NCBI RefSeq assembly: GCF_003918875.1
Contig: NW_025765461.1
Location: forward strand, 62,001 to 126,000
DNA: 64,000 nucleotides
Reading direction: 5' to 3'
Source of the DNA: Haliotis rubra
Taxonomy: Eukaryota
Part shown: piece after piece, positions 5,441 through 57,612 of the stretch
Layout of the letters: every line of letters begins with the position of its first letter
Position numbering within the stretch: position 1 is the stretch's first letter
Program-made: the position numbers and the translations under genes
Notes under the pieces: model-generated
What the model was told of the DNA's origin: nothing
Seen by the model: only the letters and a program-made list of their open reading frames with translations
Database searches by the model: none

Positions 5441-6130
5441 AACAAGAAGACAAAGTCATCAATATCCCCCGCAATGGCAAAATACTCTTCATGATTATGT
5501 CTACGAGTTATGATTATGTCAAATATTTAGGTGTGTATATAGAAAAAGTTGGAAAGAAAGAGCAGTATCACCAATTCAGTCTAAGTCAAACTTTTTAAAT
5601 GGAAATGCAAAACTATTTTGCTCCAGAAGAAATCCAAAAGGTAAACCAAAAGCACCAGTCACCACCAGATCTATCTATGTGCCAAGTTTGGTGAAGAAAT
5701 ATTGAACGGCCAGTTCTGGAAAAGCACTACCACTAAATTCATTCTAAGTCGAACTTGTTGCCATTCAAAAATGTTTTATTCAGAAATCCAAAACTACCAA
5801 AGGCACCAGTACACCACCAGATCTATCTATGTGCCAAGTTTGGTGAAGAAATAGTGAACGGTTTTAGAGTTCTGTTCCGGAAAAGAGCACAACCACTAAT
5901 TTCATTCTAAGTCGAACTTGTTGCCACAGAAACGCCAAAAATGTTTTATTCAGAATTCCAAAACTACCAAAAGTCACCAGTACACCACCAGATCTATCTA
6001 TGTGCCAAGTTTGGTGAAGAAATATTGAACGGTTTAAGAGTTCTGCTCCGGAAAAGACAAATGTGCACGGACGGACGCACGGACGGAGTCCATTTTAATA
6101 CCCCCCGCAAAACGTGTTGCGGGGGATAAA
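5441..6130. mobile_element. Non-autonomous Helentron/HINE-like element
   Basis: Starts aacaag; subterminal tatcccccgcaa is inverted to the 3' ttgcgggggata; internal tandem repeats (gtgccaagtttggtgaag x3); (GGAC)n; 3' hairpin cccccgcaa..ttgcggggg. Confidence 0.65.
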
Positions 6131-6507
6131 AAATTTTATCGCAACTATCACAGCTAGAAAAGTTATTACACTTTATCATGCTAGAGAACGACATCGACCT
6201 TCAACTCTTGATATTCACACTGTCAGTATATCTGTAAAAACAAGATGGGAATCATTATACACTGCCATCTATATATATGATCCGTTTCATACCATAGTTT
6301 ATCAGTCTTCCATGTCTGTTGTTTCAGCACATGAACAGCCAGTCCATGGGCCGTCTTGTTCTGGAACACCTGGCGACTACCTTGTGACATCTCATGAATG
6401 ATGTGCTGGAACAAAGGGGTGACTTGGTGTCATATAAACGCGCGGATTTACTGTTCCTAAGAATGTATATGGAATAAATTCCAATAACGATAAAGGTCAT
6501 ATATGAA

Positions 6508-9579: not shown

Positions 9580-12472
9580 AACTGATAATTACAAGCCATA
9601 TTCTGGCTTGTGAATTCAGCAGATTGGTACAGACCCTGAAGCTGAGGAAATCTAGACTTGCCACATTTTCTAGACTTGAGTGGGCTTTCTTGGATATATT
9701 TGCTTCAGGGTCTGTACGACAGACTAGGTGTGTCCCGATCGCTCCAGGATTTGTTTCTTTCTGTCGGAAAGCAAGACATGGGGACACTTCTCTAGCAGGG
9801 TCTCGAAGACTTCTGTCATGTCTTTGTTTGTGGCTCGGGGTCTATACTACTCAGAACCGTGTATATCTGGCTTGGTACTTCTTCGCCTCCCGAAGGGACA
9901 AACGACCCGAACGGATCTCAACATAGGCATCGGGCGATAGTTTGGTTCCTGGCATTTTTTTTCTATATCCATACACCTACATATCTCTAATTGGAGAGCA
10001 CTTCAACCGGGACACTTTTTGTCTTCCGATATAGTTTTGTGAAAAAACTAGTGTTTCTGGGAACCCAACTGGGCCGTTTGGAGCTCCTAGGCATGGTGGC
10101 CCGTTCCACCATTCCCTATACTACTGATGCGCTCAACATGGTCTATACCGCGGTTTATGCGCTTTGAAGACCTACACACGATCACCTTTGTACTACGATT
10201 GTAGTCATGTCTATAACTGTAAATAGCAGCAAGTAGTTGAAGCTGGTTTGTTAATAATAGGGCAAATACAGGCATCAGAAATTGCCTAAACCTTGTCAGA
10301 AAATACCTGCTACCTCTCATATTCTTTGTCAGTATCGTTTTTGGAAATAATTCAGTATTTGGTGTCATGTCCCGTGAACCGAGAACTATAGTTTCCTCTC
10401 TGCTTCGTGTATGAGTTTTTAATATAATTTATATCATTTTTCCAATCTATAATCAGACACAATTTAAAGTTTTCAATTATTCCAAGGAGTATTCTTCCAT
10501 CCAGTGGTACACTGAAGCCACAAGGTATATAGTTTCGAAAACATGAGACAACAATATCACATCCTTCTATTGCTGCTATTACATCATTTAGGTTGTAGAC
10601 TCCACCAGTATATTGGGAATCAAACATGACAGAAACTGCACATTAGAATCAAAGACTTACTAATTTCTGTCTGTGTTCCAACAGATGTATGAACGCTCTC
10701 GGCTCTTTCGGGTGGCCTGGTCTCGGCATCTACACCTCTGTTTTGTCCCAGCTGTAACCTGTCTGTCGTCTGCCCCTGGTTCTCCTCCCTGTCTCCCAGC
10801 TGGAACCTGTCTGTCGTCTGCCCTGGTTCTCCTCCCTGTCTCTCAGCTTGAACCTGTCTGTCGTCAGCCCCTGGTTCTCTCTCCCCCTGTGTCCCAGCTT
10901 GAACCTGTCTGTCGCCAGCCCCTGGTTCTCCTCCCTGTCTCTCAGCTTGAACCTGTCTGTCGTCTGCCCCTGGTTCTCCTCCCTGTCTCCCAGCTGGAAC
11001 CTGTCTGTCGTCTGCCCCTGGTTCTCCTCCCTGTCTCCCAGCTTGAACCTGTCTGTCGTCAGCCCCTGGTTCTCCCTCCCTGTCTCCCAGCTGGAACCTG
11101 TCTGTCGTCTGCCCCGGTTCTCCTCCCTGTCTCCCAGCTTGAACCTGTCTGTCGTCAGCCCCTGGTTCTCCTCCCTGTCTCCCAGCTGGAACCTGTCTGT
11201 CGTCAGCCCCAGGTTCTCCTCCCTGTCTCCCAGCTGGAACCTGTCTGTCGTCAGCCCCTGGTTCTCCTCCCTGTCTCCCAGCTGGAACCTGTCTGTCGTC
11301 AGCCCCAGGTTCTCCTCCCTGTCTCCCAGCTGGAACCTGTCTGTCGTCAGGCCCTGGTTCTCCTCCCTGTCTCCCAGCTGGAACCTGTCTGTCGTCAGCC
11401 CCAGGTTCTCCTCCCTGTCTCCCACCTGGAACCTGTCTGTCGTCAGCCCCTGGTTCTCTCTCCCTGTCTCCCACCTGGAACCTGTCTGTCGTCAGCCCCA
11501 GGTTCTCTCCTCCCTGTCTCCCACCTGGAACCTGTCTGTCGTCAGCCCCAGGTTCTCCTCCCTGTCTCTCAGCTGGAACCTGTCTGTCGTCAGCCCCAGG
11601 TTCTCCTCCCTGTGTCCCACCTGGAACCTGTCTGTCGTCAGCCCCAGGTTCTCCTCCCTGTCTCCCACCTGGAACCTGTCTGTCGTCAGCCCCAGGTTCT
11701 CCTCCCTGTCTCTCCAATGATGTTTCCTTTCTATGCGTTTGCTGACGTTCATAAACAACAGTTAGAGCCGGTGGATTTCCAAGAGGCATTGCCTGTGGGC
11801 TGGATTCTTGTATAGGCAGATGGTACTGTGGCCCTAGTGTACCAAATGCTCCTTGTCTGGATACTGGCACGTCCAGTTCCCCGTATCGAGCTCCTGTGGT
11901 CCCTTCTGATAAACAATAAGTATTCTCAGCACTGTGTTTATGTTGGTGCTTACCAATTCTCTTTAACATCAGAAATCTCCCTGAATGACAATTGAGGAAT
12001 GAATAAGGAACATTTCCAGAAATACAGGAGACATTGTATCTGAAACACAGGTACATCCTGGCAAAATGATACGGATGGAGCTAAAGTCTCCCCAGCTTCG
12101 TGATACGTGAACGCCACCACTGAACGAAGAAATACACCAGCGTTATGAAGATTTAGTATTCAGCTGTCCAACTTTAAATGTGAAATGTGTAAATATTCTC
12201 AGTCTTTTAACAACGACCAGAGCCAAGCTTTGATCCTTTTGTCAATACATCCTTGAGAAGCTAGGAGCATTAAAGTCCCTATTCTGTAGATTGTAGAGCA
12301 TGAGACGATTACCTGTCGTTAATTGCTCAGGTAGGTCAGCATAAGCTCTGGTTTTCTCATCTGCGTACGTCTGAGTTTCAACCGACTTCATTTCCTGCAC
12401 CACTAAACATGACGAACAAATATAATGTTGAATGTAACATTCTTCTCTGTTTATTCTGTAGATAATCTCCAT
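9580..12472 (-). pseudogene. Large disrupted orphan exon including the 478-codon ORF 10620-12056 with a 16-aa repeat
   Basis: Chain of abutting minus-strand ORFs in shifting frames (12242-12472, 10620-12056, 10352-10627, 10087-10368, 9578-9787); TQT motifs KSVETQT and SVGTQT. Confidence 0.45.
10745..11715. repeat. 48-bp tandem repeat, about 20 copies
   Basis: Unit cctggttctcctccctgtctcccagctggaacctgtctgtcgtcagcc with occasional 1-2 bp indels. Confidence 0.95.
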
Positions 12473-21602: not shown

Positions 21603-23003
21603 ATGGTCAACTACTACGTCAAACGTTTGTCTTCTGTGGCGTTCCTACTGGCCTGTGTCTTCGGATATATGACGTCACAAACCTGCCCTAGCAACTGTAT
21701 CTGTGCTGTTTCAGATTATGTGACGTGTCAGCCAAAGATGACGTCATTTCCGATAGGTCTACCTGCAAACACCACCAGCATTAACCTGCTTGGCTCCTTT
21801 AATAACAGAAACTCTCTATCAACATTGAAACACTCAGCTTTGTCAGCGTTCTCGAATCTTGAAGATTTCTACGTTACTTACAGTGAGGTGACAAAGTTAG
21901 ACGATGACTTGTTTCAAGGATTAACTAAACTAAAACGTATTGCCCTACAACATAATAAGATCTCCCAGATAAACACTGGCATCTTCCATGGCTTAAATGA
22001 TGTTGTCTTCGTGGATCTGACTGGAAACACGGGATGTAAGATCGCCGATGACGCATTTGCTTCCTTAAAGAACCTGCATGATCTATTTCTGGGTGACCTC
22101 AACCTTGGACGTGCTTCCAGTGCCATATTCACTGGGCTGACAAATCTCAGAAACCTTGATCTCCATGGAAACAATTTTGAAAAGGTATCTGTGCAATTAT
22201 TTCAACATTTGACAAGCCTTAAGACTCTAGACCTGTCCGACAATAAATTAGCAACTATTCCTGATTCGTTCGAGCTGATCTTCCAGAAGCTGCAGATCAT
22301 CCATCTTTCAGACAACCCCTGGAGATGTACATGCGACATTCAGTGGCTGAAGAACCTCAACCAGAGCGTGATGTACTCCGTGTACTCGGGAAATGTTCCG
22401 GCATGCGCTGCTCCAAGTGTACTGAAATACCATACGATTTACCATGCAGAAGATAAGGACTTCACTTGTATTCCCCCCAAAATTCTAAAGTGCGGGGATC
22501 TCTATACCGTGAAACAGGGAGATCTGCTACACATTTCATGTCAGATTGAGGGTGATCTGTTTCCGAATGTGACCTGGATGAGACCCGACGGGACCATAAT
22601 CTCAGCTTCAAGTGTCTCCATCTTCGACCCCCGGTATACGACAACAAGGGATGTCAGCACTGTTTTGACTGCTGAGGCTTCTTATGACGGGTTATGGACA
22701 GTTCAGGCTGCCAACGATAAAGGAAAGGACGAGAAAACATTCCGCGTTCATGTTCAAATTCCCACAACTACGTCAACGACTACAACTGCAACTCCGGTGG
22801 AGTCAGCTGACGTTCTTGGCAGCGGGTTCCTGGTGGCGGTCGGCGGGTTCGGGAGCACGGTGCTCCTTGGACTGATTATATTTGGAAGTGTGGTGTGCTG
22901 CAGTCAGGCTAAGAAAGGCCAGGTGGAACCGACCGACACCATGGAGTCTTTGAAGAAAGAACACATTGACACAATAACATTTATTGTTACACCACCGACT
23001 TAG
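21603..23003 (+). CDS. Leucine-rich-repeat and Ig-domain single-pass membrane protein (LIG-type), 466 aa
   Basis: Signal peptide; LRRNT CPSNCIC; LxxLxLxxN repeats; LRRCT NPWRCTCDIQWL; Ig I-set (ISCQIEG..VTW..AAND); Thr-rich stalk; TM; short tail; acceptor ctgtcattgtag at 21540. Confidence 0.93.
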   Translation: MVNYYVKRLSSVAFLLACVFGYMTSQTCPSNCICAVSDYVTCQPKMTSFPIGLPANTTSINLLGSFNNRNSLSTLKHSALSAFSNLEDFYVTYSEVTKLDDDLFQGLTKLKRIALQHNKISQINTGIFHGLNDVVFVDLTGNTGCKIADDAFASLKNLHDLFLGDLNLGRASSAIFTGLTNLRNLDLHGNNFEKVSVQLFQHLTSLKTLDLSDNKLATIPDSFELIFQKLQIIHLSDNPWRCTCDIQWLKNLNQSVMYSVYSGNVPACAAPSVLKYHTIYHAEDKDFTCIPPKILKCGDLYTVKQGDLLHISCQIEGDLFPNVTWMRPDGTIISASSVSIFDPRYTTTRDVSTVLTAEASYDGLWTVQAANDKGKDEKTFRVHVQIPTTTSTTTTATPVESADVLGSGFLVAVGGFGSTVLLGLIIFGSVVCCSQAKKGQVEPTDTMESLKKEHIDTITFIVTPPT

Positions 23004-23961
23004 TAGTGCGATGAGGATAGGTGACTTGTTGTATTAAACTGGGCTTGGATTTGGGCCTCTTGTCATGGGTTCGAGTCCCAGATTGGAACTGATTATGATT
23101 CGTCGTGATTCAGCAGCAGGTTCAGATAGGTGGTAGTCGTTTACACTTCTGTACATTAACTTGGGGATTAACTGAAATATTACGGAATATATGCAACTAA
23201 CGAAGGCAATGCAAGACATGATTGTATGAAATTTAATATTTTAAAATATTTGTTCCGCCCTAAAATATATGGAACATAACATGCATCATGCTTTGTTATT
23301 TTTAGGACGTTCGTATGAAAATTGCAATTACAAACCCTTTTAAGATCAAGCTGAATGAAACTGAAAGAAACACATAATTCTCGTCATTACGTTCTCAAAA
23401 CAACCCGTTGATAAGTTCTACTGAAAAGAGCCTTATAGGGTAAAGATGTACCCTGAACAACGGTACACGTGTTACAGCAGGTCTGGCTCTGACCCCAACC
23501 TCTCAAAGGTGGTTCACCAATGTCTGGTTTGATGTCTTTGGCAATCCCAGAATCTGCTGTAGTCGATGATTCAGCTGTGTAGCCATGGTGGAGATAGGGT
23601 TGTCGCAGGATGACGTTGTGACGCGGGATCAGTCTGATTTAGGTCGGTCACGTGACGTACCATGCCACAGGTTCACTTACCAAAGTGTAGACACACCGAA
23701 TGCTCTCGCCACGATTCTATTTCTTCCAGTCATGCAGCAAGTTTGCATAATGTTTTTTAGTTGGCTGTGACTTTGTTTAAAGAGTTAACAGTTATGTTGG
23801 GTTATTAATTTGGTCGTTGATGAGTACTGATGATTCCAAAAATACCATTGTTGTTTTGGTATCAGATGGCATCAGATAATGCTTCTTATATAGCATATGC
23901 TCTGATGTAGATAAAAAAAAAATCCCTTTGTGTTTCACTCTGCAGGATTATTGATTACCCG

Positions 23962-24202
23962 AACCCGTGAAGATCCGGGTTAGAACTGGTCTTCAGTAAT
24001 CTATGCTTGTCGTAAGAGGCGACTAACGGGATCGGGTGGTCAGACTCGCTGACTTGGTTGACACATGCCATCGTATCCCAATTGCGTAGATCGATGCTCA
24101 TGATGATGATCACGATATTGTCAGGCCCAGACCCGATAATGTACAGAGCGCCGCCATATAGCATGGATATTGCTGAGTGCAGTGTGACGAACCAACAAAC
24201 CA
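23962..24202 (+). mobile_element. SINE family B
   Basis: cccgtgaagatccgggttagaa...gatattgctgagtgc...caacaaacc; also present in the duplicate at about 53278-53520. Confidence 0.85.
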
Positions 24203-24621
24203 ACGAAATGGTTTCCCGGACATCAGTCTCTAACACAGCTGTGATGGAGTTATGTTGGATACTTCAGACAATCGTTTTTATCGGTCCATGAGTACATTTT
24301 AGCTTGCACCATGTGTGATATATGAGATATATCCAGTGAGATATCGATCAAATACAAAGGTTTTAGCAGCACCGTTAGTTATATATACCCAAGATGTACC
24401 AATGCGATGTTCTACTGTGTGGTTGCAATATAGGTACAATGTCAAGATGTTTGTTTGAAAGGACTTGGACCTATATGTCTCAATACAGATAGTTTTAAAT
24501 AATAGAAAAACAATGATATAGATTCATTAGACATTTTATTCATGTACACAATGTCTAAATGTGTGTCACATGTGCAAATGGTGACACACATGTTCTCTTT
24601 GTGGCATAGATTTCAACTAAA

Positions 24622-25187
24622 GTGGTACAACGAGGCTTTCAATTTGACAGCGGTACAACGAGGCTTTCAATCTGACCGTGGTACAACGAGGCTTTCAATC
24701 TGACAGTGGTACAACGAGGCTTTCAATCTGACAGTGGTACAACGAGGCTTTCAATGTGACAGAGGTACAGCGATGCTTTCAATCTGACAGTGGTACAACG
24801 AGGCTTTCAATCTGACAGTGGTACAACGAGGCTTTCAATGTGACAGAGGTACAGCGAGGCTTTCAATCTGACAGTGGTACAACGAGGCTTTAAATCTGAC
24901 AGTGGTACAACGAGGCTTTCAATGTGACAGAGGTACAGCGAGGCTTTCAATCTGACAGTGGTACAACGAGGCTTTCACTCTGACAGTGGTACAACGAAGC
25001 TTTCAATCTGACAGAGGTACAACGAGGCTTTCAATGTGACAGTGGTACAACGAGGCTTTCAATCTGACAGAGGTACGACGAGGCTTTCAATCTGACAGAG
25101 GTACAACGAGGCTTTCAATGTGACAGTGGTACAACGAGGCTTTCAATCTGACAGTGGTACAACGAGGCTTTCAATCTGACAGAGGTA
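24622..25187. repeat. 28-bp VNTR, about 20 copies (about 8 copies in the duplicate at 53936-54165)
   Basis: Unit gtggtacaacgaggctttcaatctgaca. Confidence 0.95.
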
Positions 25188-25384
25188 AACTGTATATCAT
25201 CATGATTTTACATGTTTTTGTCTCACGATACGACTAAATTACAGTGACACGACTAAATTACAGTGACACACGTTAACATCCAGATCAGTGCCTTACCGAT
25301 GTAACACACTACAGTGGTACGGTGTAATATTAAGCACTGAAATGTGTGTTTTTCATAAGATTGAATATAAGACTATTTGCAGCC

Positions 25385-26030
25385 ATATGGCTTACAAGGG
25401 AACATAGTATATACAGGATATGTATGTATGTCATCTAGAAGTACAATACATATACTAGCATTGCAAGTTATGTATAGTATACTTACAGTTGTTATTGACA
25501 TAGCCAATATGGCGTACAGGAACACATTGTATATGATAAATATACATGTGTATATGTTATATAAGGTGGCAGTACAACATATACTAACATTGCAAGTTAT
25601 GTATAATATACTTACAGTTGTTATTGATATAGCCAATATGGTTTACAGGAACACATGGTATATGATAAATATACATGTGTATATGTTATATAAGGTGGCA
25701 GTACAATATATACTAACATTGCAAGTTATGTATAATATACTTACAGTTGTTATTGATATAGCCAATATGGCTTACAGGAACACATGGTATATGATAAATA
25801 TACATGTGTATATGTTATACAAGGTCGCAGTACAACATATACTAACATTGCAAGTTATGTATAATATACTTACAGTTGTTATTGATATAGCCAATATGGC
25901 TTACAAGGGTACATAACATATGCTTAATATAAATGTGCAATATATTTATACTAACAAGTATGCCTGTATGCCTGCAAGTTATGCCTAGGGAATGTAAAAA
26001 TGTCTTAGACTTGAGCCAATATGGCTTACA
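25385..26030. repeat. About 120-bp AT-rich satellite units
   Basis: tactaacattgcaagttatg at 120-bp spacing (about 25582, 25702); same family at 54340-54850 and 60210-64000. Confidence 0.9.
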
Positions 26031-26169
26031 AGGTATCCCTAACTGGAATATGCGTTTTTTTCGAAAGGGTCTGTGAATATATCTCTATTTCTGATAAGAG
26101 AAGCCACACAGGGTTCACGGTTTTCTGGTGTCCTTGACCCCGATGGGATGAAGAAGCGGGTATTTCCTA

Positions 26170-27723
26170 CTATGAGGTTTCAATCTTCTTCTTGTGAGTC
26201 GCCATCCAGCCGCTATGCTTGATGGTCACGACATCGCAGTCCCCGGGAGTCAACGGCTTGTGACGGTCCGCAGCTGACAAGATGGAAACATATTTATACA
26301 CGTTTCGAAAAAACCAATGTCTACACCAATGGCTATTATGTTGGTTCAGTGTTCATATATTTTGCTCTTCTTGAGTGAGTGAGTGAGTGGGTGAGTGTTA
26401 GTGGGTGAGTGTGTGGGATGAAACTGGATTAAATCAATGGTCGATCATCTGCGCATCAATTCCTAGTTTTGGATTACCATGACAAGGATTTTCTTTGAGG
26501 GTCCCTTGGACTCATACTCTGAATTTTCAGGGGTCCTGGACAACAAAATGGGGGTCCCAGACACTTAAATAGCATTATTAATACAATGTTGTAATAGTGT
26601 TGCAATTCGGTTACTGTTATTGTATTGTGTATCATGATCATGACATTGTTACAGTAATTAAAATGCAAATGATACCATAACCCGGCTAGGAGCAAACTCA
26701 GTGATAACGTATTGTGACATGATTGAAATTTTACTAAAAGTACTTAGACATTTTTTTAAAGAGACCTAACAAAATACTCATCAGTATTAAGAATTTGAGA
26801 ATTTCAAACTAGGAAAACAAAAGCTTGGCTCGCCGGAGGGTATTGTTTGAAACATTACATGTTATCCTTTTAGAAAATACATTATAAAGACGAGTTACAT
26901 TTTATGTCAGTGTGCCCTATGTACAATGTTTTCACACACAAATATTTTTCAAATACCATTTTTTAAAAACAAATGTACACTCTCTCAGAACATTACTGCA
27001 AACTTCTATATCTTTATTATTGTCATGTTCTTGACTCAGGGAACCCATGCAAAACGTTTTGTGGTAGACGCATACGGTACTGTTATGTGCGATATAGTTC
27101 TAAGATGTCATCCGTCCATGGCAACACTTACCTTTCTTTCTGGAGCCGGAAGCAGTTGGCAGCAGGACAGATCTGATCATGTGACAGTATCGTGACCGGA
27201 AGTTTCCGAATGTCTGTCGTTCAAAGATCCGTGGCGACTTGTGGCGACAGTGGGTGACGATCTGGTTGTCAGGTCCTCTCTGTTCGCAGACAAACACCCG
27301 GGGCCTGCCGTCACACCCAGGGGGGACGTACACGACGACCGTGTCTCCTAGCAGTATGTTCGTGGGGAGTTTGTCATCTAAGTATATATATACAATGTTG
27401 TTGTGCCCGAGTTGTACAATAGTTGTATTGCTAAGGCTAGCATTGGAGTCTTTCTTTTGAATAAAGGAAATTGTGTTTCTATTGTGCCCGATTTGTACAA
27501 TGCGCAGTATATCGATTTGAGGACGATTACAGAGACGCATCTTACAGCTGTCTGGCTTTTGGTCAGATTGTAAAGACTGGTTGGCATGTTTCATCTTTCC
27601 TTTTCTACCTTTCTCTGAAAGACATGTATTTTGGTCATTCATATGCTGAGAACTGTACTCTAATTGTTTGTTTGGCTCGAAGCCAGACGGTGCGACGTGG
27701 TGCGCCCCCCTAGCTTCAGACAT
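26170..27723 (-). CDS. Tandem-RHIM protein, copy 1 (join 27723-27132, 26273-26170; about 231 aa)
   Basis: IVQIGHNRN (VQIG 27498-27487) and LSNTTIVQLGHNNIVYI (VQLG 27417-27406); acceptor catcacag before 27777; donor AAG|gtaagt at 27132/27131; acceptor cttgtcag before 26273; all sites conserved in copy 2. Confidence 0.75.
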
Positions 27724-28202
27724 TGCCCCGGAGTTTGAACAGATCCCTGGTTCGTATGTCACCACTCGCCGTTGTCTCTGTGATGAAATGTAGAAAGAAT
27801 TATATCAGCTTTACAAAGACAAATCTTAAAACGATTTCATGGAATAGTAACTTATATTGCATACCAAAGGTCTTGCGAAGGACATCCAATACTCTGATTG
27901 AAGTAAGTCACTCTATAATTGTTAGAAATCTACGTACATTTTTACCCTTAATATAAACGGACACACGTAATTTGACCTGTATAAATTACATGTTAAAAAG
28001 GCAGCAACCAGGACAGACAGGAGTTCACTTCATCAGCTGTTTGCTGCAGCCTTTGCAGTGGGTCAATCTATAGTATTGATGTATGCCGTAATGCTATATG
28101 TGTATGCATACGAGGGTGTATGAGAGTTGCCGTGTCTTCGCATGTGTTTGTGACGAGTGCCAGGATACGCTGGAAAACGCCATATGCCAACACAGTTTGA
28201 TA

Positions 28203-28365
28203 GTGAGTGAGTTTAGTTTTACGCCGCTTTTAGCAGTATTCCAGCAATATCACGGCGGGGGAACACAAGAAAAGAGCTTCACTCATTGTACTCGAACCCG
28301 GGTAGGGAGTCGAACCTAGGTCTTCGGCGTGAACGCTTTAACCAACAGGTTACCCCACCGCCCCC
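28203..28365 (-). mobile_element. SINE family A in intron 1 of the RHIM gene
   Basis: TSD-like tttgatagtga on both sides. Confidence 0.85.
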
Positions 28366-28409
28366 AATTTGATAGTGAATCACTGTCAAATGCCTTTGTT
28401 ATGGTCGTA

Positions 28410-28822
28410 AGGTGGGCGGTGGGCGAGCTGGCTAAGGCGCCAGGCTAGTGATCCAGCGAGGTTGAGGTGCCGGGATCGAGCCCACCTGTGAGCGGGTGTA
28501 AAAACCTTGGAGTCAACTTTGTGTGCAGACTCTTTCCGTGTTGTCACAACCCCTAGTGTACAGTACACAACCCTGTGCACTTAAAAGAACCCACCAATCC
28601 GTTGGTATATGACCAGATGGTGGCCACATCAAGATGAGAAAGCCACAATAACTCGGTGCGCCTAGTGGCAGCAAGAGTTGTATACTCCCCAGGAGATGAG
28701 ATTGATAATACGATGTACCGTTGAGATTGACATCCAATGATCGAGGGAAAAATACCAGTGCCTTGAGCATGCTCTAGTTGCGTGGATATGTGCGCTATAT
28801 AAATATACTATACTATAATAAT
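28410..28822 (+). mobile_element. tRNA-derived SINE, probably Nin-domain type
   Basis: tRNA-like head; gagtcaactttgtgtgcagactct..gcacttaaaagaaccc core (family from recall); gcgctatataaat plus short-repeat tail; absent from the duplicate. Confidence 0.65.
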
Positions 28823-28916
28823 ATAACTGAGATATTGAAACACTTGTCGGTAACTTTCATGACGGAATTCAGTCTTGGACAAGCTAGGAAAGTAAAGTGA
28901 AGAAAGTGACACTTAC

Positions 28917-29115
28917 CTGTCCTGCCTACCACAGAGCCTGGTCGAAACAACGTTAGCTGCAAACCCCTCTCTGAATAAAACACCACGAATTAAGGGTGAC
29001 TGTCAGCTCTTATATACTGTCCTGTTTCAAATAGCTACGTCATTGTTAAGCAATCAGCTAGGTGCATTCCGAGGTGTGCATGTTACCGTGCAGGCTTGTA
29101 TAATGTCACGTGATG
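28917..29115 (-). promoter_or_regulatory. Promoter and non-coding exon 1 of the RHIM gene
   Basis: Minus-strand TATATAA 29016-29010; donor acag|gtaagt at 28917/28916; equivalents in copy 2 at about 57810-57906. Confidence 0.6.
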
Positions 29116-29299
29116 CTATCTGCCTCAAGTTTCGTAGGGGCCGGCAATTCAACATGGAGATATTATCGTGATTCCTCACGTGTCATTGTCAACCATCCAT
29201 TCATACTTTACCAACCATGACTAGTGACAATCAATAAATAATGCAGATCGGTGTAGATTGCTGTAGATCGGTGTTGATTTAACATATGGGTCATTGATA

Positions 29300-29870
29300 T
29301 GCATGAAACTCATTAATATGCAAATGAATGCATGACGTCATAGGTCGGCGAGGTTAATGAATCGTAGATATATGTTGATTGGCTCATCCAAATCCCGTGA
29401 CCTTAGTGAAGGCATGAAAAACCCATGAATATGCAAAATGAATGCCGGACGTCATAGGTCAGCGAGGTGGTGAACGAATCAGAGCTATGACGACGACGAC
29501 AAGATAAGAAAACTCGTGAATATGCAAATGAATGCTATATATAGTCACAGGTCAGCGTGGTTAATGAATCGTAGATATGACGACAGTAAGGTAAGAAAAC
29601 TCATAATATATATTCAAATGAATTGCCGTATGTAATAGGTCGGCGAGGTTAATGAATCGTAGCTATGACGACAGACAATGTGGTAAGAAAATAAACATGG
29701 ATATGCAAATGTATCTTCAGATCCTGATAAGGTGTCCCATAGGGGTCCTCCAATCCTCCTTTTGCCGGATCAACCCGGATCAGACGTTGATTGGCTCATC
29801 CAAGTCACGTGATCGTAATAAGGCATGAAAACACATGAATATGCACATGAATGCATGACGTCATAGCAAA
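29300..29870. promoter_or_regulatory. Degenerate repeats carrying octamer (ATGCAAAT) and CRE (TGACGTCA) motifs
   Basis: aatatgcaaatgaatg..gacgtcataggtc.gcgagg recurs about 5 times; perfect CRE at about 29333 and 29856. Confidence 0.55.
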
Positions 29871-30566
29871 GCCGCAGTATACGAAGCAGATTTTTGTTTA
29901 ATTGTGAATCATTTGCAGCGCAGAAAGCCTCCGGAACCACACTGAAAGTTCCTTCCTTATTTCTCTTCAATATCTTAAAGAATATAATACTATGTTATGA
30001 GAGTGTGTGTTTTGTAATTTGTAATAACACATTGATTAAGTTATAATTAAACAACCTTCAATCAGTATATGTGTTCTCGCCGTGAATGTTAAGACTCTGG
30101 TGAGTTAATATTTTATATTTGTGACCCAATATTTTAGATTTGTGACTCAATTGCATTGTACTAGAAATCTATATTGCCATTCTTTGTAGCTTGCTGATTG
30201 TTGTTCAATATATTATTGAATATTTTAGACTTGTCTTTGTTGTATTTTGCTGGTTCAAAGGGGACTCTTAAACCTTTTGTCACGGCAAATTATTAACCGT
30301 AACAGCTATCATGTACGTGACCATCGAAGAGAAGCAATTCTTGGAAATTCAGGTATGTCAAGGTCCCTGATAAGCTCTCTTTATCACAAGAGCGTAGTTG
30401 TTCCTTTGCCACTCAGTGGCGTATACAGATGAATCGTGGTTTAACACATACATCGCTCTAGAGGCGCTATGGCAAACAAAATCTACCTATTTCAGCTAGC
30501 GACCTCAGCTTCTGCATTATTTTTACCTGTGAGCACCGACCTAATTTCTCCCAGCTATCTACTCCA

Positions 30567-33955: not shown

Positions 33956-36900
33956 TTAATGCTGCATGAACATCATCACGATCAGGACCACCAGGATCTC
34001 GATTTGAACTAAAACGTGGAACCAAATCGTGAGATTTTCTTTGACCTTCTGATCTTGGCAGTGTGGCCTCAAGTAGCGTCTCACAGACTTGGTTTGACGT
34101 GTGACCTTGGCCACCTCCCCAACAGTCTGTGTATGTCGCGTGACCTTGGCCACCTCACCGAGAGTCTGTGAACGTCGCGTGACCTTGGACACCTCACCGA
34201 GAGTCTGTGAACGTCGCGTGACCTTGGCCACCTCACCAACCGTCTCTGTATTTCGCGTGACCTTGGCCACCTCACCAACAGTCTGCGTACATCTTGTGGC
34301 TACCTTCCGTGACCTTGACCGAAGCTTCCTACTTCTTCCAACACGTCTTGGCATTACTGAAACAATAATCAACAGAGGACCTTTAGGCTATCTAAATCAC
34401 CTGACTTTGTTTATAATTGCATTAAAACCTAATTCTGAGTAATTACAATTCTACCATGTATGACCCTTTCCATCAACACAATGTCATTCATGGGAGATGT
34501 TGAGTAAAGAAACATCCAGAGATTCAAACAAGCAGATTTACACAATTTCAAAATTGTGAAGTCATTTTTAGCGAAACGCATTTCTTGTATATCAAAAGGA
34601 GAAAAGCATATGTACTATCTGAAATATATGGGTCTAGATGAACAGATATTCTATTCAACAGGTTATTTCCGTCAACATTATAAAATATTAACACTCTGAA
34701 CATCTGTTGTCGCGCTAATGACATGTATCATATAAAGAGAATGGATCTACAGTTAACGCATACGGTAAATCATAACGAAAATACCTACCAATCAGATTCT
34801 TGACATGTACTGTTTGATGTACTATGATGTTGGAATGGCCGTTCTGCACATTGGTAACATCTGCAACGATGTCCACCATCAGGTTCTGTCCATCTCCATC
34901 AACAGCATCTGTTCTGTGTCTGTCGCCATCATCTACGCTCAGTCTTTGTCCTCTTTCGCTGTCCTGTCTTTTCGTAATTCTTTCTCTTTTGATGTAATCT
35001 CCTGTCCACATTCTGCCACCATCAACGTATTGTGGCTGCGCTGTTTTGACAGTGCCATCTACTTCTCTTCCTTCAGTACAACGATCTCCTCTCCTTTTTT
35101 CTTCATTGCTATCACATTTTCCCTGCATTCCCAACACAGCACCATCTCCGAGTCCTAACTCTATTCCTGCACAAACGTCATCGTTTCCTTTATCAATTTC
35201 TTCAGTGTTGTAATGGTATTTCTTCCATATTTTACCACCGCCATCACCACAATCGCCCTGTTTTTCACCAACAGAGCCATCTCTGAACCGTCTTTCTCTT
35301 CCTCCACCGACAACAGCGCCTCCTCCACCTCCAAGGATGTACTCATCTCTCTCCCATCTGGCTCCAAACCTCTCATATTCTCCCTGCTTTCCATCAACAG
35401 TGAGATTTTTGTCTCGTCTTTTTCTTCCTCCACGAAGAACAGTTCTGTCTCCACCTCCAGTCATATACTGCAATCTCTCCCACCTTCCTCCCTGATTTCC
35501 ATCAACAACGTCTTCTCCTCCACTTTCGTCATCAATGTCTCCTCTATCTCTATCTCCACCTCCAAAAGTATTTTGATCTCTCCTCCATTTTCTTCCACCA
35601 CCAAAACAATTTCCACGCTCCTCTCCAAAAGCCTTGTCTATTTTCCTTTTTTCAGCTGAACCAGCACCCCGACCCCTGTCCACCTCAGTTTCCACCACAC
35701 CTGCACACCGACTTCTTTCCTTCTCAGTATCGGAGACACCAGAGCCCTGACCTGTTTCCTTCTCAGTTTCCAGGACACCAGTACGCTGACCTCTTTCCTT
35801 CCTCTCGTACTCTCCCTGCTCTCCACCCACAGAGCCATTTCTGCCTCTTCTTTCTCTTCCTCCACCGACAATAGCGCCTCCTCCACCTCCAAGGATGTAC
35901 TCATCTCTCCCCCATCTTCCTCCAAACCTCTCATATTCTCCCTGCTTTCCATCAACAGTGAGATCTTTGTCTCGTCTTTTTCTTCCTCCACGAAGAACAG
36001 TTCTATCTCCACCTGCAGTCACATAGTGCAATCTCTCCCAACTTCCTCCCTGCTTGCCATCAACAACGTCTTCTCCTCCACTTTCGTCTTCAATGTCTCC
36101 TCTATCTCCACCTCCAATGGTACTTTGATCTCTCCTCCATTTTCTTCCACCACCAAAACATTCTCCCTCCTCCTCTCCAAAAGCCTTGTATATTTTCCTT
36201 TTACCAGCTGAACCAGCACGCTGACCTCTGTCCACCTTAGTCTCCACGACACCAGCACACCGACTTCTTTCTTTCTCAGTATCGGAGACACCAGCACGCC
36301 GACTTATTTCCTTCTCAGTATCGGAGACACCAGCAGCCTGACCTCTCTTCTTCTCAGTTTCGGAGACATCATCACCCCGACCTCTTTCCTTCTCAGTTTC
36401 GGAGACACCAGAACCCCGACCTCTTTCCTTCTCAGTATCCAAGACACCAGCACCTTGACCTTTTTCCGTCTCAGTTTCGGAGACACCAGCATACCGACCT
36501 CTTTCCTTCTCAGTTTCGGAGACACCAGCCCCCCGACCTCTGTCCTCAGTTTTCGAGACACCAGCATCCTGACCTCTTTGTTTCTCAGTTTCGGAGACAT
36601 GAGCACCCCGACTTCTTTCCTTTTCAGTTTCGGAGACACCAGAACCCCGACCTCTTTCCTCCTCAGGTTCGGAGACACCAGCACCTTGACCTATTTCCGT
36701 CTCAGTTTTGGAGACACCAGCATACCGACCTCTTTCCTTCTCAGTTTCGGAGACACCAGCCCCCCGACCTCTGTCCACAGTTTTCGAGACACCAGCATCC
36801 TCACCTCTTTCCTTCTCAGTTTTGGAGGCATGAGCACCCCCACTTCTTTCCTTCTCAGTTTCGGAGACACCAGCACCCGGACCTCTGTCCATCTCAATAT

Positions 36901-37030
36901 CCGAGACACCTTTATTCCTGCCGCAGATGGCACCAGGCTGTAGTAGCTTTGTACCATCTCTTACAGGTGTAGCATTCCTTCTCTCTCCACTCCTATTATG
37001 TCTTTGTCTGTCACCAAAACACCGTCGCAT
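33956..37030 (-). CDS. Predicted 880-aa spliced protein (join 37030-34789, 34356-33956): charged/Gly repeats, RHIM-like motif, TQT array, hydrophobic C-terminus. Unspliced, it reads as a 771-aa ORF and a 132-aa ORF.
   Basis: 2.3-kb ORF; acceptor ttttggtttcag 6 nt before the ATG; donor TTG|gtaggt at 34789 and acceptor attgtttcag before 34356 are phase-compatible; minus-strand AATAAA at about 33179-33184. Confidence 0.65.
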
Positions 37031-51133: not shown

Positions 51134-52322
51134 TATCAACATTGAAACACTCAGCTTTGTCAGCGATCTCGAATCTTGAAGATTTCTACGTTACTTACAG
51201 TGAGGTGACAAAGTTGGACTATACTTGTTCCAAGGATTGACTAAACTAAAACGCATTGCCCTGAAACATAATAAGATCTCCCAGATAAACACTGGCATCT
51301 TCCATGGCTGAAATGATGTTGTCTTCGTGGATCTGACTGGAAACACGGGATGTAAGATCGCCGATGACGCATTTGCATCCTTGAAGAACCTGCATGATCT
51401 ATTTCTGGGTGACCCTAACCTTGGACGTGCTTCCAGTGCCATGTTCACTGGGTTGACAAATCTCAGAAACCTTGATCTCCATGGAAACAATTTTGAAAAG
51501 GTATCTTTGCAATTATTTCAACATTTGACAAGCCTTAAGACTCTAGATCTGTACGACAATAAATTAGCAACTATTCCAGATTTGTTCGAGCTGATCTTCC
51601 AGAAGCTGCAGATCATCCATCTTTCAGACAACCCCTGGAGATGTACATGCGACATTCAGTGGCTGAAGAACCTCAACCAGAGCGTGATGTACTCCGTGTA
51701 CTCGGGCAATGTTCCGGTATGCGCTGCTCCAAGTGTACTGAAATACCATACGATTTACCATGCAGAAGATAAGGACTTCACTTGTATTCCCCCCCCCAAA
51801 TTCTAAAGTGCGGGGATCTCTATACCGTGAAACAGGGAGATCTTCTACACATTTCATGTCAGATTGAGGGTGATCTGTTTCCGAATGTGACCTGGATGAG
51901 ACCCGACGGGACCATAATCTCAGCTTCAAGTGTCTCCATCTTCGACCCCCGGTATACGACAACAAGGGATGTCAGCACTGTTTTGACTGCTGAGGCTTCT
52001 TATGACGGGTTATGGACAGTTCAGGCTGCCAACGATAAAGGAAAGGACGAGAAAACATTCCGTGTTCATGTTCAAATTCCCCACAACTACGTCAACGACT
52101 ACAACTGCAACTCCGGTGGAGTCAGCTGACGTTCTTGGCAGCGGGTTCCTGGTGGCGGTCGGCGGGTTCGGGAGCACGGTGCTCCTTGGACTGATTATAT
52201 TTGGAAGTGTGGTGTGCTGCAGTCAGGCTAAGAAAGGCCAGGTGGAACCGACCGACACCATGGAGTCTTTGAAGAAAGAACACATTGACACAATAACATT
52301 TATTGTTACACCACCGACTTAG
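51134..52322 (+). pseudogene. 5'-truncated, frameshifted copy of the LRR-Ig-TM gene
   Basis: Homology starts at tatcaacattg (equivalent to 21817), so signal peptide and LRRNT are absent; -1 at about 51222, +2 at about 51790, +1 at about 52080. Confidence 0.88.
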
Positions 52323-54909: not shown

Positions 54910-56593
54910 TCACAGTTTTCTGGTGCCCTTGACCCCGATGGGATGAAGAAGCGGGTACTTCCTGCTATCAGGTTTCACTCTTCTTCTTGTGCGAGTCCGA
55001 TGAGAGCCACCATGCTTGATGGTCACGACATCGCAGTCCCCGGGAGTCAAAGGCTTATGACGGCCCGCAGCTGACAAGATGGAAACATGTATATAAACAA
55101 TTTGAAAATACTCAATGTCTATATGTTGGTTAATGGTTCATATATTTTACTCTTCTTGAGTGAGTGAGTGAGTGAGTGAGTGAGTGTTAGTGGGTGAGTG
55201 TGTGGGATGAAACTGGATTAAATCAATGGTCGATCATCTGAGCATCAATTCCTAGTTTTGGATTACCATGACAAGGATTTTCTTTGAGGGTCCCTTGGAC
55301 TCATACTCTGAATTTTCAGGGGTCCTGGACTACAAAATGGGGGTCCCAAACACTTAAATAGCATTATTAATACAATGTTGTAACATGGTTGTAATTCGGT
55401 TACTGTTATTGTATTGTGTATCATGATCATGACATTGTTACAGTAATTAAAATGCAAATGATACAACAGCCCGGCTAGTAGCAGACTCAGTGATAACGTA
55501 TTGTGACATGATTGAAATTTTACTAAAAGTATTTAGACTTTGTTTAAAAAGACCAAACAAAATACTCATCATTATTAAGAATTTGAGAATTTCAAGCTAG
55601 GAAAACAAAAGCTTGGCTCGCCGGAGGGTATTGTTTGAAACATTACATGTTATCCTTTTAGAAAATACATTATAAAGACAGTAACATTTTATATTAGTGT
55701 GCCCTATGTATGATGTTTTCACACACAAATATTTTTCAAATACCATTTTTAAAAACAAAATGTACACTCTCTCAGAACATTACCACAAACTTCTATATCT
55801 TTATTATTGTCATGTTCTTGGCTCGGGGAACCCATGCAAAACGTTTTATGCTAGACACATACGCTACTGTTATGTGCGATATAGTTCTAAGATGTCATCC
55901 GTCCATGGCAACACTACACAATATCTTGTTACTGTGCCACCTCTTCGTATATGATACATGTATCTACACTGTACTTGGGCCGTTAGCCTTGTTGATTTAT
56001 TATTTTACTTTACTAACAGTGTAACATAACTGACAACGCCAGACGCAAAGTGCCCTCCGTCCATAGCAACACTTACCTTTCTTACTGGAGCCGGAAGCAG
56101 CTGGCAGCAGGACAGATCTGATCACGTGACAGTGTCGTGACCGGAAGTTGTCAAATGTCTGTCGTTCACAGATCCGTGGCGACTTGTGGCGACAGTGGGT
56201 GACAATCTGGTTGTCAGGTCCCCTCTGTTCGCAGACAAACACCCGGGGCCTGCCGTCACACCCAGGGGGGACGTACACGACGACCGTGTCTCCTAGCAGT
56301 ATGTTCATGGGGAGTTTGTCACCTAAGTATACATATACAATGTTGTTGTCCCCGAGTTGTACAATAGTTGTATTGCTAAGGCTAGCATTGGAGTCTTTCT
56401 TTTGAATAAAAGAAATGGTGTTTCTATTGCGCCCGATTTGTACAATGCGCCGTATATCGATTTGAGGACGATTACAGAGACGCTTCTTACAGCTCTCTGG
56501 CTTTTGGTCAGATTGTAAAGACTGGTTGGCATGTTTCAACTTTCCTTTTCTACCTTTCTCTGATCGTAAAAGACGTGTATTTTGGGCATTCAT
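54910..56593 (-). CDS. Tandem-RHIM protein, copy 2 (join 56593-56077, 55070-54910; about 225 aa from the downstream ATG)
   Basis: IVQIGRNRN (56443-56432) and IVQLGDNNIVYV (56362-56351); same splice sites; the upstream ATG is out of frame because of a C8 versus C6 run at about 56656. Confidence 0.65.
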
Positions 56594-57159
56594 ATGCTGA
56601 GAACTGCACTCTAAGTGTTTGTTTGGCTCGAAGCCAGACGGTGCGACGTGGTACGCCCCCCCCTAGCTTCAGACATGGCCCCGGAGTTTGAACAGATACC
56701 TGGTTCATATGTCACCACTCGCCGTTGTCTCTGGGATGAAATGTAGAAAGAATTATATCAGCTTTACAAACGATTTCATAGAATAGTAACTTATATTGCA
56801 TACCAGAGCCAGAGAGGTCTTGCGAAGGACATCCAATACTCTGATTGAAGTAAGTCACTCTATAATTCTTAGAAATCTACGTACATTTTTACCCTTAATA
56901 CAAACGTACACACGTAATTTGACCTGTATAAATTACATGTTAAAAAGGCAGCAACCAGGACAGACATGAGTTCACTTCGTCAGCTGTTTGCTGCAGTCTT
57001 TGCAGTGGGTCAATCAATATACGTATTGATTTGAGTTATGCCGTAATGCTATATGTGTATGTATACGTGGCTATATGAGAGTTGCCGTGTCCTCACATGT
57101 GTTTGTGACGAGTGCCAGGATACGCTGGAAAACTCCATATGCCAACACAGCTTGATAGT

Positions 57160-57612
57160 CAGTGAGTTTACTTTTACGCCGCATTTAGCAGTATTCCAGC
57201 AATATCACGCCGGGGGACACAAGAAATGGGCTTCACACGTTGTTACCATGCGGGGAATAGAACCCGGGTATTCGGCGTGAAAGCTTTAGCTACTAGGCTA
57301 GCCCATCTTCCCCAATTTGATAGTGAGCGAGTGAGTTTAGTTTTTCGCCGCTTTTAACAGTATTCCAGCAATATCACACCGGGGGACACAAGAAACGGGC
57401 TTCACACGTTGTTACCATGCGGGGAATAGAACCCGGGTAGGCTACCCCATCGTCCCCAATTTGATGGTGAGCGAGTGACTTTAGTTTTTCGCCGCTTTTA
57501 ACAGTATTCCAGCAATATCACGGCGGGGAACACAAGACGTGGGCTTCACACATTTTACTCATATGGGGAATCGGGCCTTCCGCGTGAACGCTGTAGTCGT
57601 CCCCAGTTTGAT
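57160..57612 (-). mobile_element. Three tandem SINE family A copies
   Basis: gtgagtttagtttt..cgccgc..agcaatatcac x3, separated by aatttgat.gtgag. Confidence 0.85.

What the first reader, a model, noticed from the sequence alone, without database searches (positions are those of the whole stretch)
26170..27723. Small stand-alone protein with tandem RHIM amyloid-signalling motifs
Seen: a gene model with TATA, non-coding exon and two coding exons, all with canonical splice sites, encodes IVQIGHNRNTI and LSNTTIVQLGHNNIVYI 27 aa apart, followed by a degenerate third motif (NILLGDTVVVYV). No kinase, TIR, death or Z-alpha domain is recognisable. Established: RHIMs of RIPK1, RIPK3, TRIF and ZBP1 have the core (I/V)Q(I/L/V)GxxN followed by alternating hydrophobics and form signalling amyloids; viral RHIM proteins such as MCMV M45 act as decoys. 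Inference: a RHIM-only adaptor, amplifier or decoy in an invertebrate innate-immune or cell-death pathway. Both cores are unchanged in the diverged second copy while the adjacent residues vary (H>R, H>D).
Basis: partly seen in the sequence, partly recalled or inferred. Interest (0 to 1): 0.82.

Follow-up and report, generated by a model that had tools for sequence, protein, structure and literature searches.

The report
Abalone-only protein with RHIM-like motifs
This is a real, spliced and transcribed gene found only in abalone, whose small protein carries two strictly conserved motifs that look like the amyloid-forming RHIM of cell-death kinases next to an unknown conserved domain; no profile test confirms that they are RHIMs.

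Summary
A minus-strand gene (ATG 27723, donor 27132|27131, acceptor 26274|26273, stop 26170) encodes a 231-aa protein identical to NCBI LOC124270394 of Haliotis rubra. RNA-like contigs from three runs of one study carry exactly this junction. The cores IVQIG and IVQLG lie 27 aa apart. They are invariant in 8 gene copies from 3 abalone species, with synonymous codon changes inside the cores.

- Pfam RHIM scores 10-14 bits against a cut-off of 20.
- A profile built from the abalone motifs finds no RIPK chain in the PDB.
- "RHIM-only" is wrong. The best-conserved part is a basic, Cys/His-bearing C-terminal module of about 105 aa with no relatives. An exhaustive profile search of 1.84 billion proteins found only abalone proteins.
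- The second copy in the window belongs to a young ~29 kb duplication. Exons are 95.6% identical and the intron 94.5%, so its unchanged cores prove nothing.

My best reading, at about 0.4, is a lineage-specific assembly adaptor or regulator that works through RHIM-like beta-arch motifs. The main rival, at about 0.35, is that the motifs are ordinary strands of a novel fold.

The scan already met this family on other DNA of this genome (s1-327960). This locus adds two more copies.

The parts
27724..27777 (-). 5' untranslated part of the first coding exon. The acceptor cag lies at 27780-27778. An upstream non-coding exon is implied but was not located.
   Evidence: RNA-like contigs end at 27777-27781 with unlaid letters beyond; sequence read
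27132..27723 (-). Coding exon 1 (codons 1-197 plus 1 nt), donor G|GTAAGT
27463..27501 (-). Motif 1, I75-F87: IVQIG followed by x3-N-x-I-x-F. The Asn sits one residue later than in canonical RHIMs.
27379..27420 (-). Motif 2, I102-Y115: IVQLG-x-x-N-x-V-x-[IV]. It fits the RHIM pattern (core tetrad, Asn at G+3, alternating hydrophobics).
27132..27375 (-). Conserved C-terminal module, first part (D117 to the exon end).
   Evidence: no Pfam hit; no relatives outside Haliotis
26274..27131 (-). Intron (858 nt, GT..AG)
   Evidence: joint 26273|27132 in contigs of X1, X3 and X4
26170..26273 (-). Coding exon 2 with stop TAG (26172-26170). Residues to G219 (26209-26273) finish the conserved module. The last 12 residues are frame-shifted relative to all paralogues.
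26000..26169 (-). 3' UTR (at least this far; contigs run beyond 26000)
   Evidence: table 8
54910..56676 (-). Second copy of the gene (exon 1 56077-56676, exon 2 54910-55070). Both motifs and splice sites are intact. Two extra G in a poly-G run just after the ATG break the frame in this assembly, and there is a 6-nt in-frame insertion.

Best explanation
A real, low-copy, spliced and transcribed gene of a small family restricted to abalone (Haliotis). The 231-aa protein has no signal peptide. It has three parts: a polar, poorly conserved N-terminal tail (1-68); two internally duplicated motifs of the form IVQ[IL]G-H-N-(x)-N-x-[IV]-x-[FI], joined by a polar linker of variable length; and a basic module of about 105 aa with invariant Cys/His and unknown fold. 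Shown: the gene, its splicing, its restriction to Haliotis, and purifying selection on the motif cores. Inferred: the two motifs act like RHIM or HET-s pseudo-repeats. That is, they would be beta-arch segments that stack with themselves or with a partner's motif into an ordered, amyloid-type assembly, which would bring the C-terminal module into, or block, a signalling complex. That would make the protein an adaptor or regulator, probably in innate immunity. I do not file it as a RHIM family member.
For: Gene and transcript. Family only in Haliotis: the word search found 6 proteins. The exhaustive profile search of 1.84e9 representatives found 2, both Haliotis. There are no viral relatives. 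Synteny between H. rubra and H. asinina is conserved: a large gene without Pfam hits, then the small gene(s), then an LRR+Ig gene on the opposite strand. The cores are invariant in 8 copies of 3 species, while codons vary synonymously (V GTA/GTG/GTT, I ATC/ATA/ATT, Q CAA/CAG, L CTC/CTG, N AAC/AAT). The positions G+1 and G+2 change amino acid. dN/dS in the motif region is 0.15-0.49. The core-to-core distance varies (27, 32, 39 aa) and the N-terminal flank is polar and unalignable, as expected for motifs in a flexible region. In motif 2 the invariant positions (Q, G, Asn at G+3, hydrophobics at G+5 and G+7) are the key positions of the RHIM pattern. RHIM is the only Pfam family that P0001 touches at E<10, and it is matched by 4 of the 6 members. 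Curlin repeat, another Q-x-G-x-x-N amyloid, is the only other weak hit to a motif-2 piece. Tandem RHIMs joined by unfolded linkers are described for ZBP1 and invertebrate proteins (PMC4262963). RHIM-bearing RIPK1 exists in zebra mussel and other spiralians (PMC12119088).
Against: PF12721 scores are 10.1-14.1 bits against a cut-off of 20, and motif 1 gives no hit. At that score roughly one chance hit per proteome is expected. A profile of 11 abalone motifs finds no RIPK1/RIPK3 chain in the PDB; its top hit is a helical bacterial protein with the string IVQLGH. In motif 1 the Asn sits one residue later than in the canonical pattern. Motif 2 directly abuts the conserved C-terminal module, so it could be that module's first strand. 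AlphaFold models are uninformative (pLDDT 32 and 38.6). No partner, no induction data and no fibril data exist. Overall constraint is only moderate (omega 0.40-0.64 over residues 69-219).
Confidence: 0.4

Rival explanations
1. The RHIM resemblance is coincidental. Residues about 70-220 form one novel beta-rich (possibly metal-binding) globular domain. The IVQxG segments are ordinary conserved strands and turns that arose by a small internal duplication. The function is unrelated to amyloid signalling.
For: All profile tests are below threshold. Motif 2 and the 'third motif' run straight into the most conserved region without a linker. Low-confidence AlphaFold secondary structure shows a run of strands from 70 to 204. 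About 1 in 55 shuffles of this protein has one tetrad, and several proteins per proteome are expected to have two. The string IVQLGH also occurs in a helical protein.
Against: The distance between the two cores varies by 12 residues among homologues, and the linker is polar. That is unusual inside a compact domain. The pattern of invariant versus variable positions in motif 2 matches the RHIM key positions.
Confidence: 0.35
2. The small protein and its upstream neighbour (an 880-aa repeat protein with a hydrophobic tail) form a matched pair that shares a V-Q-x-G-H-x-N-I motif. This would resemble fungal NWD2/HET-S or bacterial amyloid-signalling gene pairs, in which one partner templates the other.
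For: The best local BLASTP match between the two proteins is exactly motif 2 against the neighbour's VQNGHSNII segment (7 of 15 identical). The neighbour's motif and the gene order are kept in H. asinina.
Against: The match has E = 0.26 for a single comparison. The neighbour has Asn at the third core position, where RHIMs need a hydrophobic residue. In H. asinina the whole surrounding region is conserved, not the motif specifically. No convincing counterpart was found in the H. rufescens locus (E 2.1). The duplicated copy 2 has no such neighbour motif in the window.
Confidence: 0.07
3. The two motifs are leucine-rich-repeat-like units (LxxLxLxxNxI).
For: The only PDB match to the motif region is the LRR protein LRIG1, aligned repeat on repeat.
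Against: E = 7.3, which is not significant. No Pfam LRR model matches at E<10. The two motifs would need different registers, and the invariant Asn of motif 2 falls off the LRR Asn position. Two units cannot form an LRR solenoid.
Confidence: 0.03
4. A decaying or functionless young gene family: transcribed but not doing anything specific.
For: This copy has a frame-shifted C-terminal tail, and copy 2 has a frameshift after the ATG. One H. rufescens copy has a non-canonical donor. omega is 0.40-0.64.
Against: ORFs are kept open in 3 species. There are significantly fewer non-synonymous than synonymous changes (32 N against 22 S differences over residues 69-219). The cores are invariant despite synonymous variation. 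Synteny is conserved, and spliced transcripts exist.
Confidence: 0.1

Closest known systems
RHIM (Pfam PF12721) of RIPK1, RIPK3, TRIF and ZBP1; ZBP1 in particular, with its tandem RHIMs
   Same: Core tetrad [IV]-Q-[IVL]-G. Motif 2 has Asn at G+3 and alternating hydrophobics. Two copies sit in tandem, joined by a polar linker of variable length, as described for ZBP1 and several invertebrate proteins (PMC4262963).
   Different: Scores are below the Pfam cut-off (10-14 against 20 bits). Motif 1 has one extra residue before the Asn. There is no kinase, death, TIR or Z-alpha domain. Instead there is an unknown basic Cys/His C-terminal module. No homology is detectable outside Haliotis.
Drosophila Pirk (a small regulator of the IMD pathway with a RHIM-like region) and the cRHIM proteins PGRP-LC/LE and IMD
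   Same: A small protein without enzymatic domains whose only recognisable feature is a RHIM-like region, in a protostome. This is a possible model for a regulator that binds motif-bearing receptors (review PMC13506858).
   Different: No sequence relationship. The insect cRHIM consensus differs (VxxG). The abalone cores are closer to the vertebrate tetrad. No IMD adaptor or RHIM-bearing PGRP has been reported in molluscs (PMC9835746).
Viral RHIM decoys (MCMV M45/vIRA, HSV ICP6/ICP10)
   Same: RHIM used without a signalling kinase.
   Different: Those are viral proteins with a ribonucleotide-reductase-like body. This one is host-encoded, syntenic between abalone species, and has no viral relatives.
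HET-s prion-forming domain (two pseudo-repeats forming a beta-solenoid) and curli CsgA repeats
   Same: Two similar short repeats separated by a flexible loop. There is a Q-x-G-x-x-N signature and a weak Curlin_rpt hit of 13.3 bits.
   Different: No Pfam HET-s hit. The curlin score is below its cut-off of 20.7. Different kingdoms and contexts.

Membership tests
RHIM (PF12721) | Score at or above Pfam's gathering threshold (20 bits) | tested here: not met
   P0001 scores 10.1 bits (E 0.66). The best of all pieces is 14.1 bits (E 0.036, H. asinina motif 2). Motif 1 gives no hit. Four of six family members match at E<10.
RHIM (PF12721) | Core tetrad [IV]-Q-[IVL]-G, conserved among orthologues | tested here: met
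   IVQIG and IVQLG are invariant in 8 copies of 3 species, with synonymous codon variation inside them.
   Met in motif 2 (invariant N109 and V111, hydrophobic residue at 113). Motif 1 has the Asn at G+4 and hydrophobics at G+6 and G+8.
RHIM (PF12721) | Motif embedded in natively unfolded flanks (PMC4262963) | tested here: inconclusive
   The N-terminal flank and linker are polar, indel-rich and poorly conserved, but motif 2 abuts the conserved C-terminal module. AlphaFold was uninformative.
RHIM (PF12721) | Reciprocal similarity: a profile of the candidate motifs retrieves known RHIM chains | tested here: not met
   The profile of 11 motifs searched against 177,635 PDB sequences found no RIPK1/RIPK3 chain at E<=10. 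The top hit is unrelated.
RHIM (PF12721) | Core-dependent amyloid formation and homotypic binding to another RHIM protein | not testable with these tools
   Needs ThT/EM/SDD-AGE and co-IP with AAAA mutants.
Leucine-rich repeat | Match to LRR profiles; several LxxLxLxxNxL units in one register | tested here: not met
   No Pfam LRR hit at E<10. LRIG1 matches at E 7.3 only. The two motifs would need different registers.
Curlin repeat (PF07012) | Score at or above the gathering threshold (20.7 bits) | tested here: not met
   13.3 bits, E 0.08, for one piece only.

The most novel reading that the evidence does not exclude
Abalone evolved a lineage-specific family of host-encoded small proteins. Their tandem RHIM-type motifs would form, or poison, signalling amyloids together with motif-bearing sensors or kinases of the same genome, such as a mollusc RIPK1, the ZNFX1 noted elsewhere in this scan, or the adjacent 880-aa tail-anchored protein. 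The unknown basic Cys/His C-terminal module would be a new effector or sensor domain. This would be the first RHIM-type adaptor or regulator system described in a spiralian outside RIPK1.
Probability: 0.25. Interest if true: 0.75.

Novelty: new variant of a known kind. Interest (0 to 1): 0.45.

Why it matters
RHIM-type functional amyloids drive necroptosis and NF-kB signalling in vertebrates and IMD signalling in insects. For spiralians the literature read here reports only RIPK1 homologues with a RHIM tetrad (PMC12119088). [quoted passage not shown] A host-encoded, fast-evolving, tandemly duplicated family whose only recognisable feature is a conserved pair of RHIM-pattern motifs would point to a lineage-specific amyloid-signalling or regulatory layer. 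That is of interest in an animal that suffers herpesvirus and Vibrio epizootics. It would also supply a new C-terminal domain to characterise. If the motifs prove to be ordinary strands, this is simply one more orphan gene family.

Tried and rejected
1. AlphaFold2 on the full protein (pLDDT 32) and on the C-terminal module (pLDDT 38.6), each with the 6-sequence alignment. Both models were too poor, so I ran no fold search.
2. ESM Atlas search by features gave no usable hit.
3. The exhaustive profile search gave no relatives outside Haliotis, so no deeper alignment could be built.
4. The viral contig scan gave no relative.
5. The PDB sequence search with the motif region returned only a non-significant LRR match, so I rejected the LRR reading.
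6. The reverse profile search against the PDB found no RIPK chain.
7. The conservation argument from the window's second copy was rejected. Exon identity is 95.6%, intron 94.5% and flank 92.5%.
8. A putative H. rufescens counterpart of the neighbour's motif (L002 at about 21387) is an 11-aa match at E 2.1 with stop codons on both sides, so I treated it as chance.
9. I looked for Haliotis RIPK1 in the supplements of PMC12119088; nothing was held. The paper on necroptosis origins in Metazoa (PubMed 39947503) is not held.
10. I did not build a RHIM alignment from memory for an HMM-HMM comparison, because no tool supplied bona fide RHIM sequences.
11. I ran no further search on the motif alone. 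The length window (127-404 aa) and the database size make a short motif unsearchable.

Full report
**What is there**

The motifs lie on the minus strand, in ORF 27100-27765. Reading that strand gives this gene model:
- ATG at 27723, with no upstream ATG in the exon.
- Exon end at 27132, followed by GTAAGT.
- An acceptor ttgtcag before 26273.
- A TAG stop at 26172-26170.

The frame is kept across the junction and the product is 231 aa. The word-index protein search returned a 231-aa protein that is 100% identical: 'uncharacterized protein LOC124270394 [Haliotis rubra]'. It also returned five relatives, all from abalone: two more from H. rubra, one from H. asinina and two from H. rufescens. The window is therefore blacklip abalone DNA (assembly GCA_003918875.1, contig QXJH01001511.1).

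**Transcript evidence**

I laid contigs of four public runs on 26000-30000.
- Three runs of one study (X1, X3, X4) cover the exons and hardly the intron.
- Each of the three holds a contig joining 26273 to 27132. The joint skips 858 nt, with ends CT..AC on the plus strand, which is GT..AG on the gene's strand.
- One 662-nt contig spans 26000-26273 plus 27132-27440 with 6 differences and no gaps. So the unusual C-terminal tail of this copy is present in RNA.
- The fourth run (X5) covers intron and exons evenly and lacks the joint, as expected for DNA. There is therefore no processed copy.
- Contigs end at 27777-27781, beside a good acceptor (cag 27780-27778). A spliced non-coding leader is thus likely.

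**The protein**

Alignment of the six proteins (A1) shows three parts.
- Residues 1-68 are polar (60% disorder-promoting residues), poorly conserved and partly unalignable.
- Residues 69-116 hold the two motifs.
- Residues 117-219 are the best-conserved part (86% mean column identity, with a single one-residue gap, in H. asinina). They are basic (net +8) and have invariant C137, C146, C159, C180-H181, C210 and H217.

The description 'RHIM-only' is therefore inaccurate.

Pfam finds nothing in the module. The exhaustive HMM search of 1.84 billion representative proteins with the family profile found only two representatives, both abalone. The ESM Atlas gave no usable hit and viral contigs none. 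AlphaFold2 models of the full protein and of the module alone were too poor to use (pLDDT 32 and 38.6), so the fold is unknown.

**The motifs**

- Both have the form IVQ[IL]G-H-N-(x)-N-x-[IV]-x-[FI], so they are an internal duplication. Motif 1 carries one extra residue between the Gly and the Asn.
- The core-to-core distance is 27 aa in four proteins, 32 in one and 39 in one. The linker therefore tolerates insertions.
- tblastn found two further copies: the window's copy 2 and an unannotated tandem copy in H. asinina (L003:4642-5229 plus 6045-6134). That makes eight copies in all.
- In six of these eight copies, the ones whose DNA I held, both cores are unchanged while their codons vary synonymously (for example V GTA/GTG/GTT, I ATC/ATA/ATT, Q CAA/CAG, L CTC/CTG). 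The residues at G+1 and G+2 change amino acid: H/R/Q and N/H/K/Q in motif 1, H/D/N and N/E in motif 2. This directly shows purifying selection on the cores.
- Nei-Gojobori dN/dS is 0.15-0.49 for the motif region and 0.45-0.62 for the C-terminal module. Over residues 69-219 it is 0.40-0.55 between species and 0.64 between the two H. rufescens copies.
- Those two H. rufescens copies have nearly identical C-terminal modules but diverged motif regions. That suggests gene conversion or partial duplication.

**Is it a RHIM?**

- PF12721 is the only Pfam family that P0001 touches at E<10, and four of the six members match it. It scores 10.1 bits for this protein (7 residues aligned). The best score is 14.1 bits (E 0.036), for H. 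asinina motif 2. The cut-off is 20 bits. Motif 1 scores nothing.
- A weak Curlin-repeat hit (13.3 bits) shows only that motif 2 has the generic Q-x-G-x-x-N amyloid-repeat look.
- In the reverse direction, a profile of 11 abalone motifs retrieves no RIPK chain from the PDB. Its top hit is a helical bacterial protein containing the string IVQLGH.
- The motif region alone gives only a non-significant LRR match (E 7.3). No LRR profile supports that reading.
- Shuffling this protein yields at least one tetrad in 1.8% of trials and at least two in 0.01%. A few such proteins per proteome are therefore expected by chance.

Membership is thus not established. What remains is that the pattern of invariant versus variable positions in motif 2 agrees with the RHIM key positions. 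In addition, the architecture (tandem motifs, polar variable linker) matches what is described for ZBP1 and invertebrate RHIM proteins (PMC4262963).

**The second copy**

The window carries a segmental duplication of about 29 kb (about 21.9-28.3 kb matching 51.2-57.3 kb, 93-99% identical). Between the two gene copies, exon 1 is 95.6% identical, the intron 94.5% and the 5' flank 92.5%. The unchanged cores in copy 2 therefore carry no weight; the cross-species data do.

In this assembly copy 2 has two extra G in a poly-G run just after the ATG, which is a frameshift. It also has a 6-nt in-frame insertion. Its motifs, module and splice sites are intact. This copy (P0001) in turn has a frame-shifted tail after TIKH compared with all paralogues.

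**Context**

In both H. rubra and H. asinina the gene order is: a large gene without Pfam hits (880 or 747 aa), then the small gene(s), then an LRR+Ig gene on the opposite strand.

The large neighbour carries a VQNGHSNII segment, conserved in H. asinina. This segment is the best local match to motif 2 of the small protein. However, E is 0.26 and the third core residue is Asn. A matched-pair model like fungal NWD2/HET-S is therefore only a low-probability idea.

**Literature**

- RHIM-tetrad RIPK1 homologues exist in zebra mussel and other spiralians, and the mussel C-terminus activates NF-kB in a RHIM-dependent way (PMC12119088).
- RHIM-bearing PGRPs and IMD have not been found in molluscs (PMC9835746).
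- Drosophila Pirk is a regulator with a RHIM-like region (PMC13506858).
- No paper I found describes this abalone family.

**Earlier notes of this scan**

The scan already described this family on another piece of the genome (s1-327960), with the same conclusion that a RHIM function is unproven. It also noted RHIM-pattern motifs on an abalone ZNFX1 (s1-349418), which I could not examine.

**Verdict**

- The RHIM interpretation is plausible but unproven. My estimate is about 0.4 for a RHIM-like assembly function and about 0.35 for coincidental strands of a novel fold.
- The protein is not 'RHIM-only'.
- Interest is moderate.

Noticed in passing
window 33956-37030 (minus): The upstream neighbour is an 880-aa protein with acidic/basic 13-aa coding repeats (39-nt period), a conserved VQNGHSNII segment (at about 34849), an array of TQT-type motifs and a hydrophobic C-terminal tail. 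It has no Pfam hit. Its ortholog sits in the same position in H. asinina.
   Followed up: partly
window 21900-28300 and 51200-57300: A segmental duplication of about 29 kb (93-99% identical) carries the small gene and an LRR+Ig gene (window 21603-23003, plus strand; 466 aa), with minisatellites inside it.
   Followed up: partly
window 28144-28813: A very high-copy interspersed repeat. Summed contig depth reaches 1.6 million in the DNA-like run and about 80,000 in the RNA-like runs, with many loose ends at 28202 and 28262.
   Followed up: no
window 24565-25300, 25386-25953, 10837-11801, 1744-2575: Minisatellite arrays with periods of 28, 129, 48 and 84 nt. The 28- and 129-nt arrays recur in the duplicated segment (53879-54278, 54345-54764).
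   Followed up: no
window about 19594 (minus): An ORF fragment with a helix-turn-helix-like string typical of DNA-transposon transposases (…RLSQEERERVIGM…). It is probably a transposon remnant.
   Followed up: no
L003:4642-5229 and 6045-6134; L003:9710-9874: H. asinina has an unannotated second tandem copy of the small gene 5 kb upstream of the annotated one. A short pseudo-exon fragment with a degraded motif 1 (VVQIA) lies just upstream of the annotated copy.
   Followed up: partly
L002:14956-15480 and 29917-30117: The H. rufescens gene model for P0005 joins its main exon to a last exon 14.4 kb away across a non-canonical donor (G|GAAAG). It is possibly a chimeric model or a decaying copy.
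   Followed up: no
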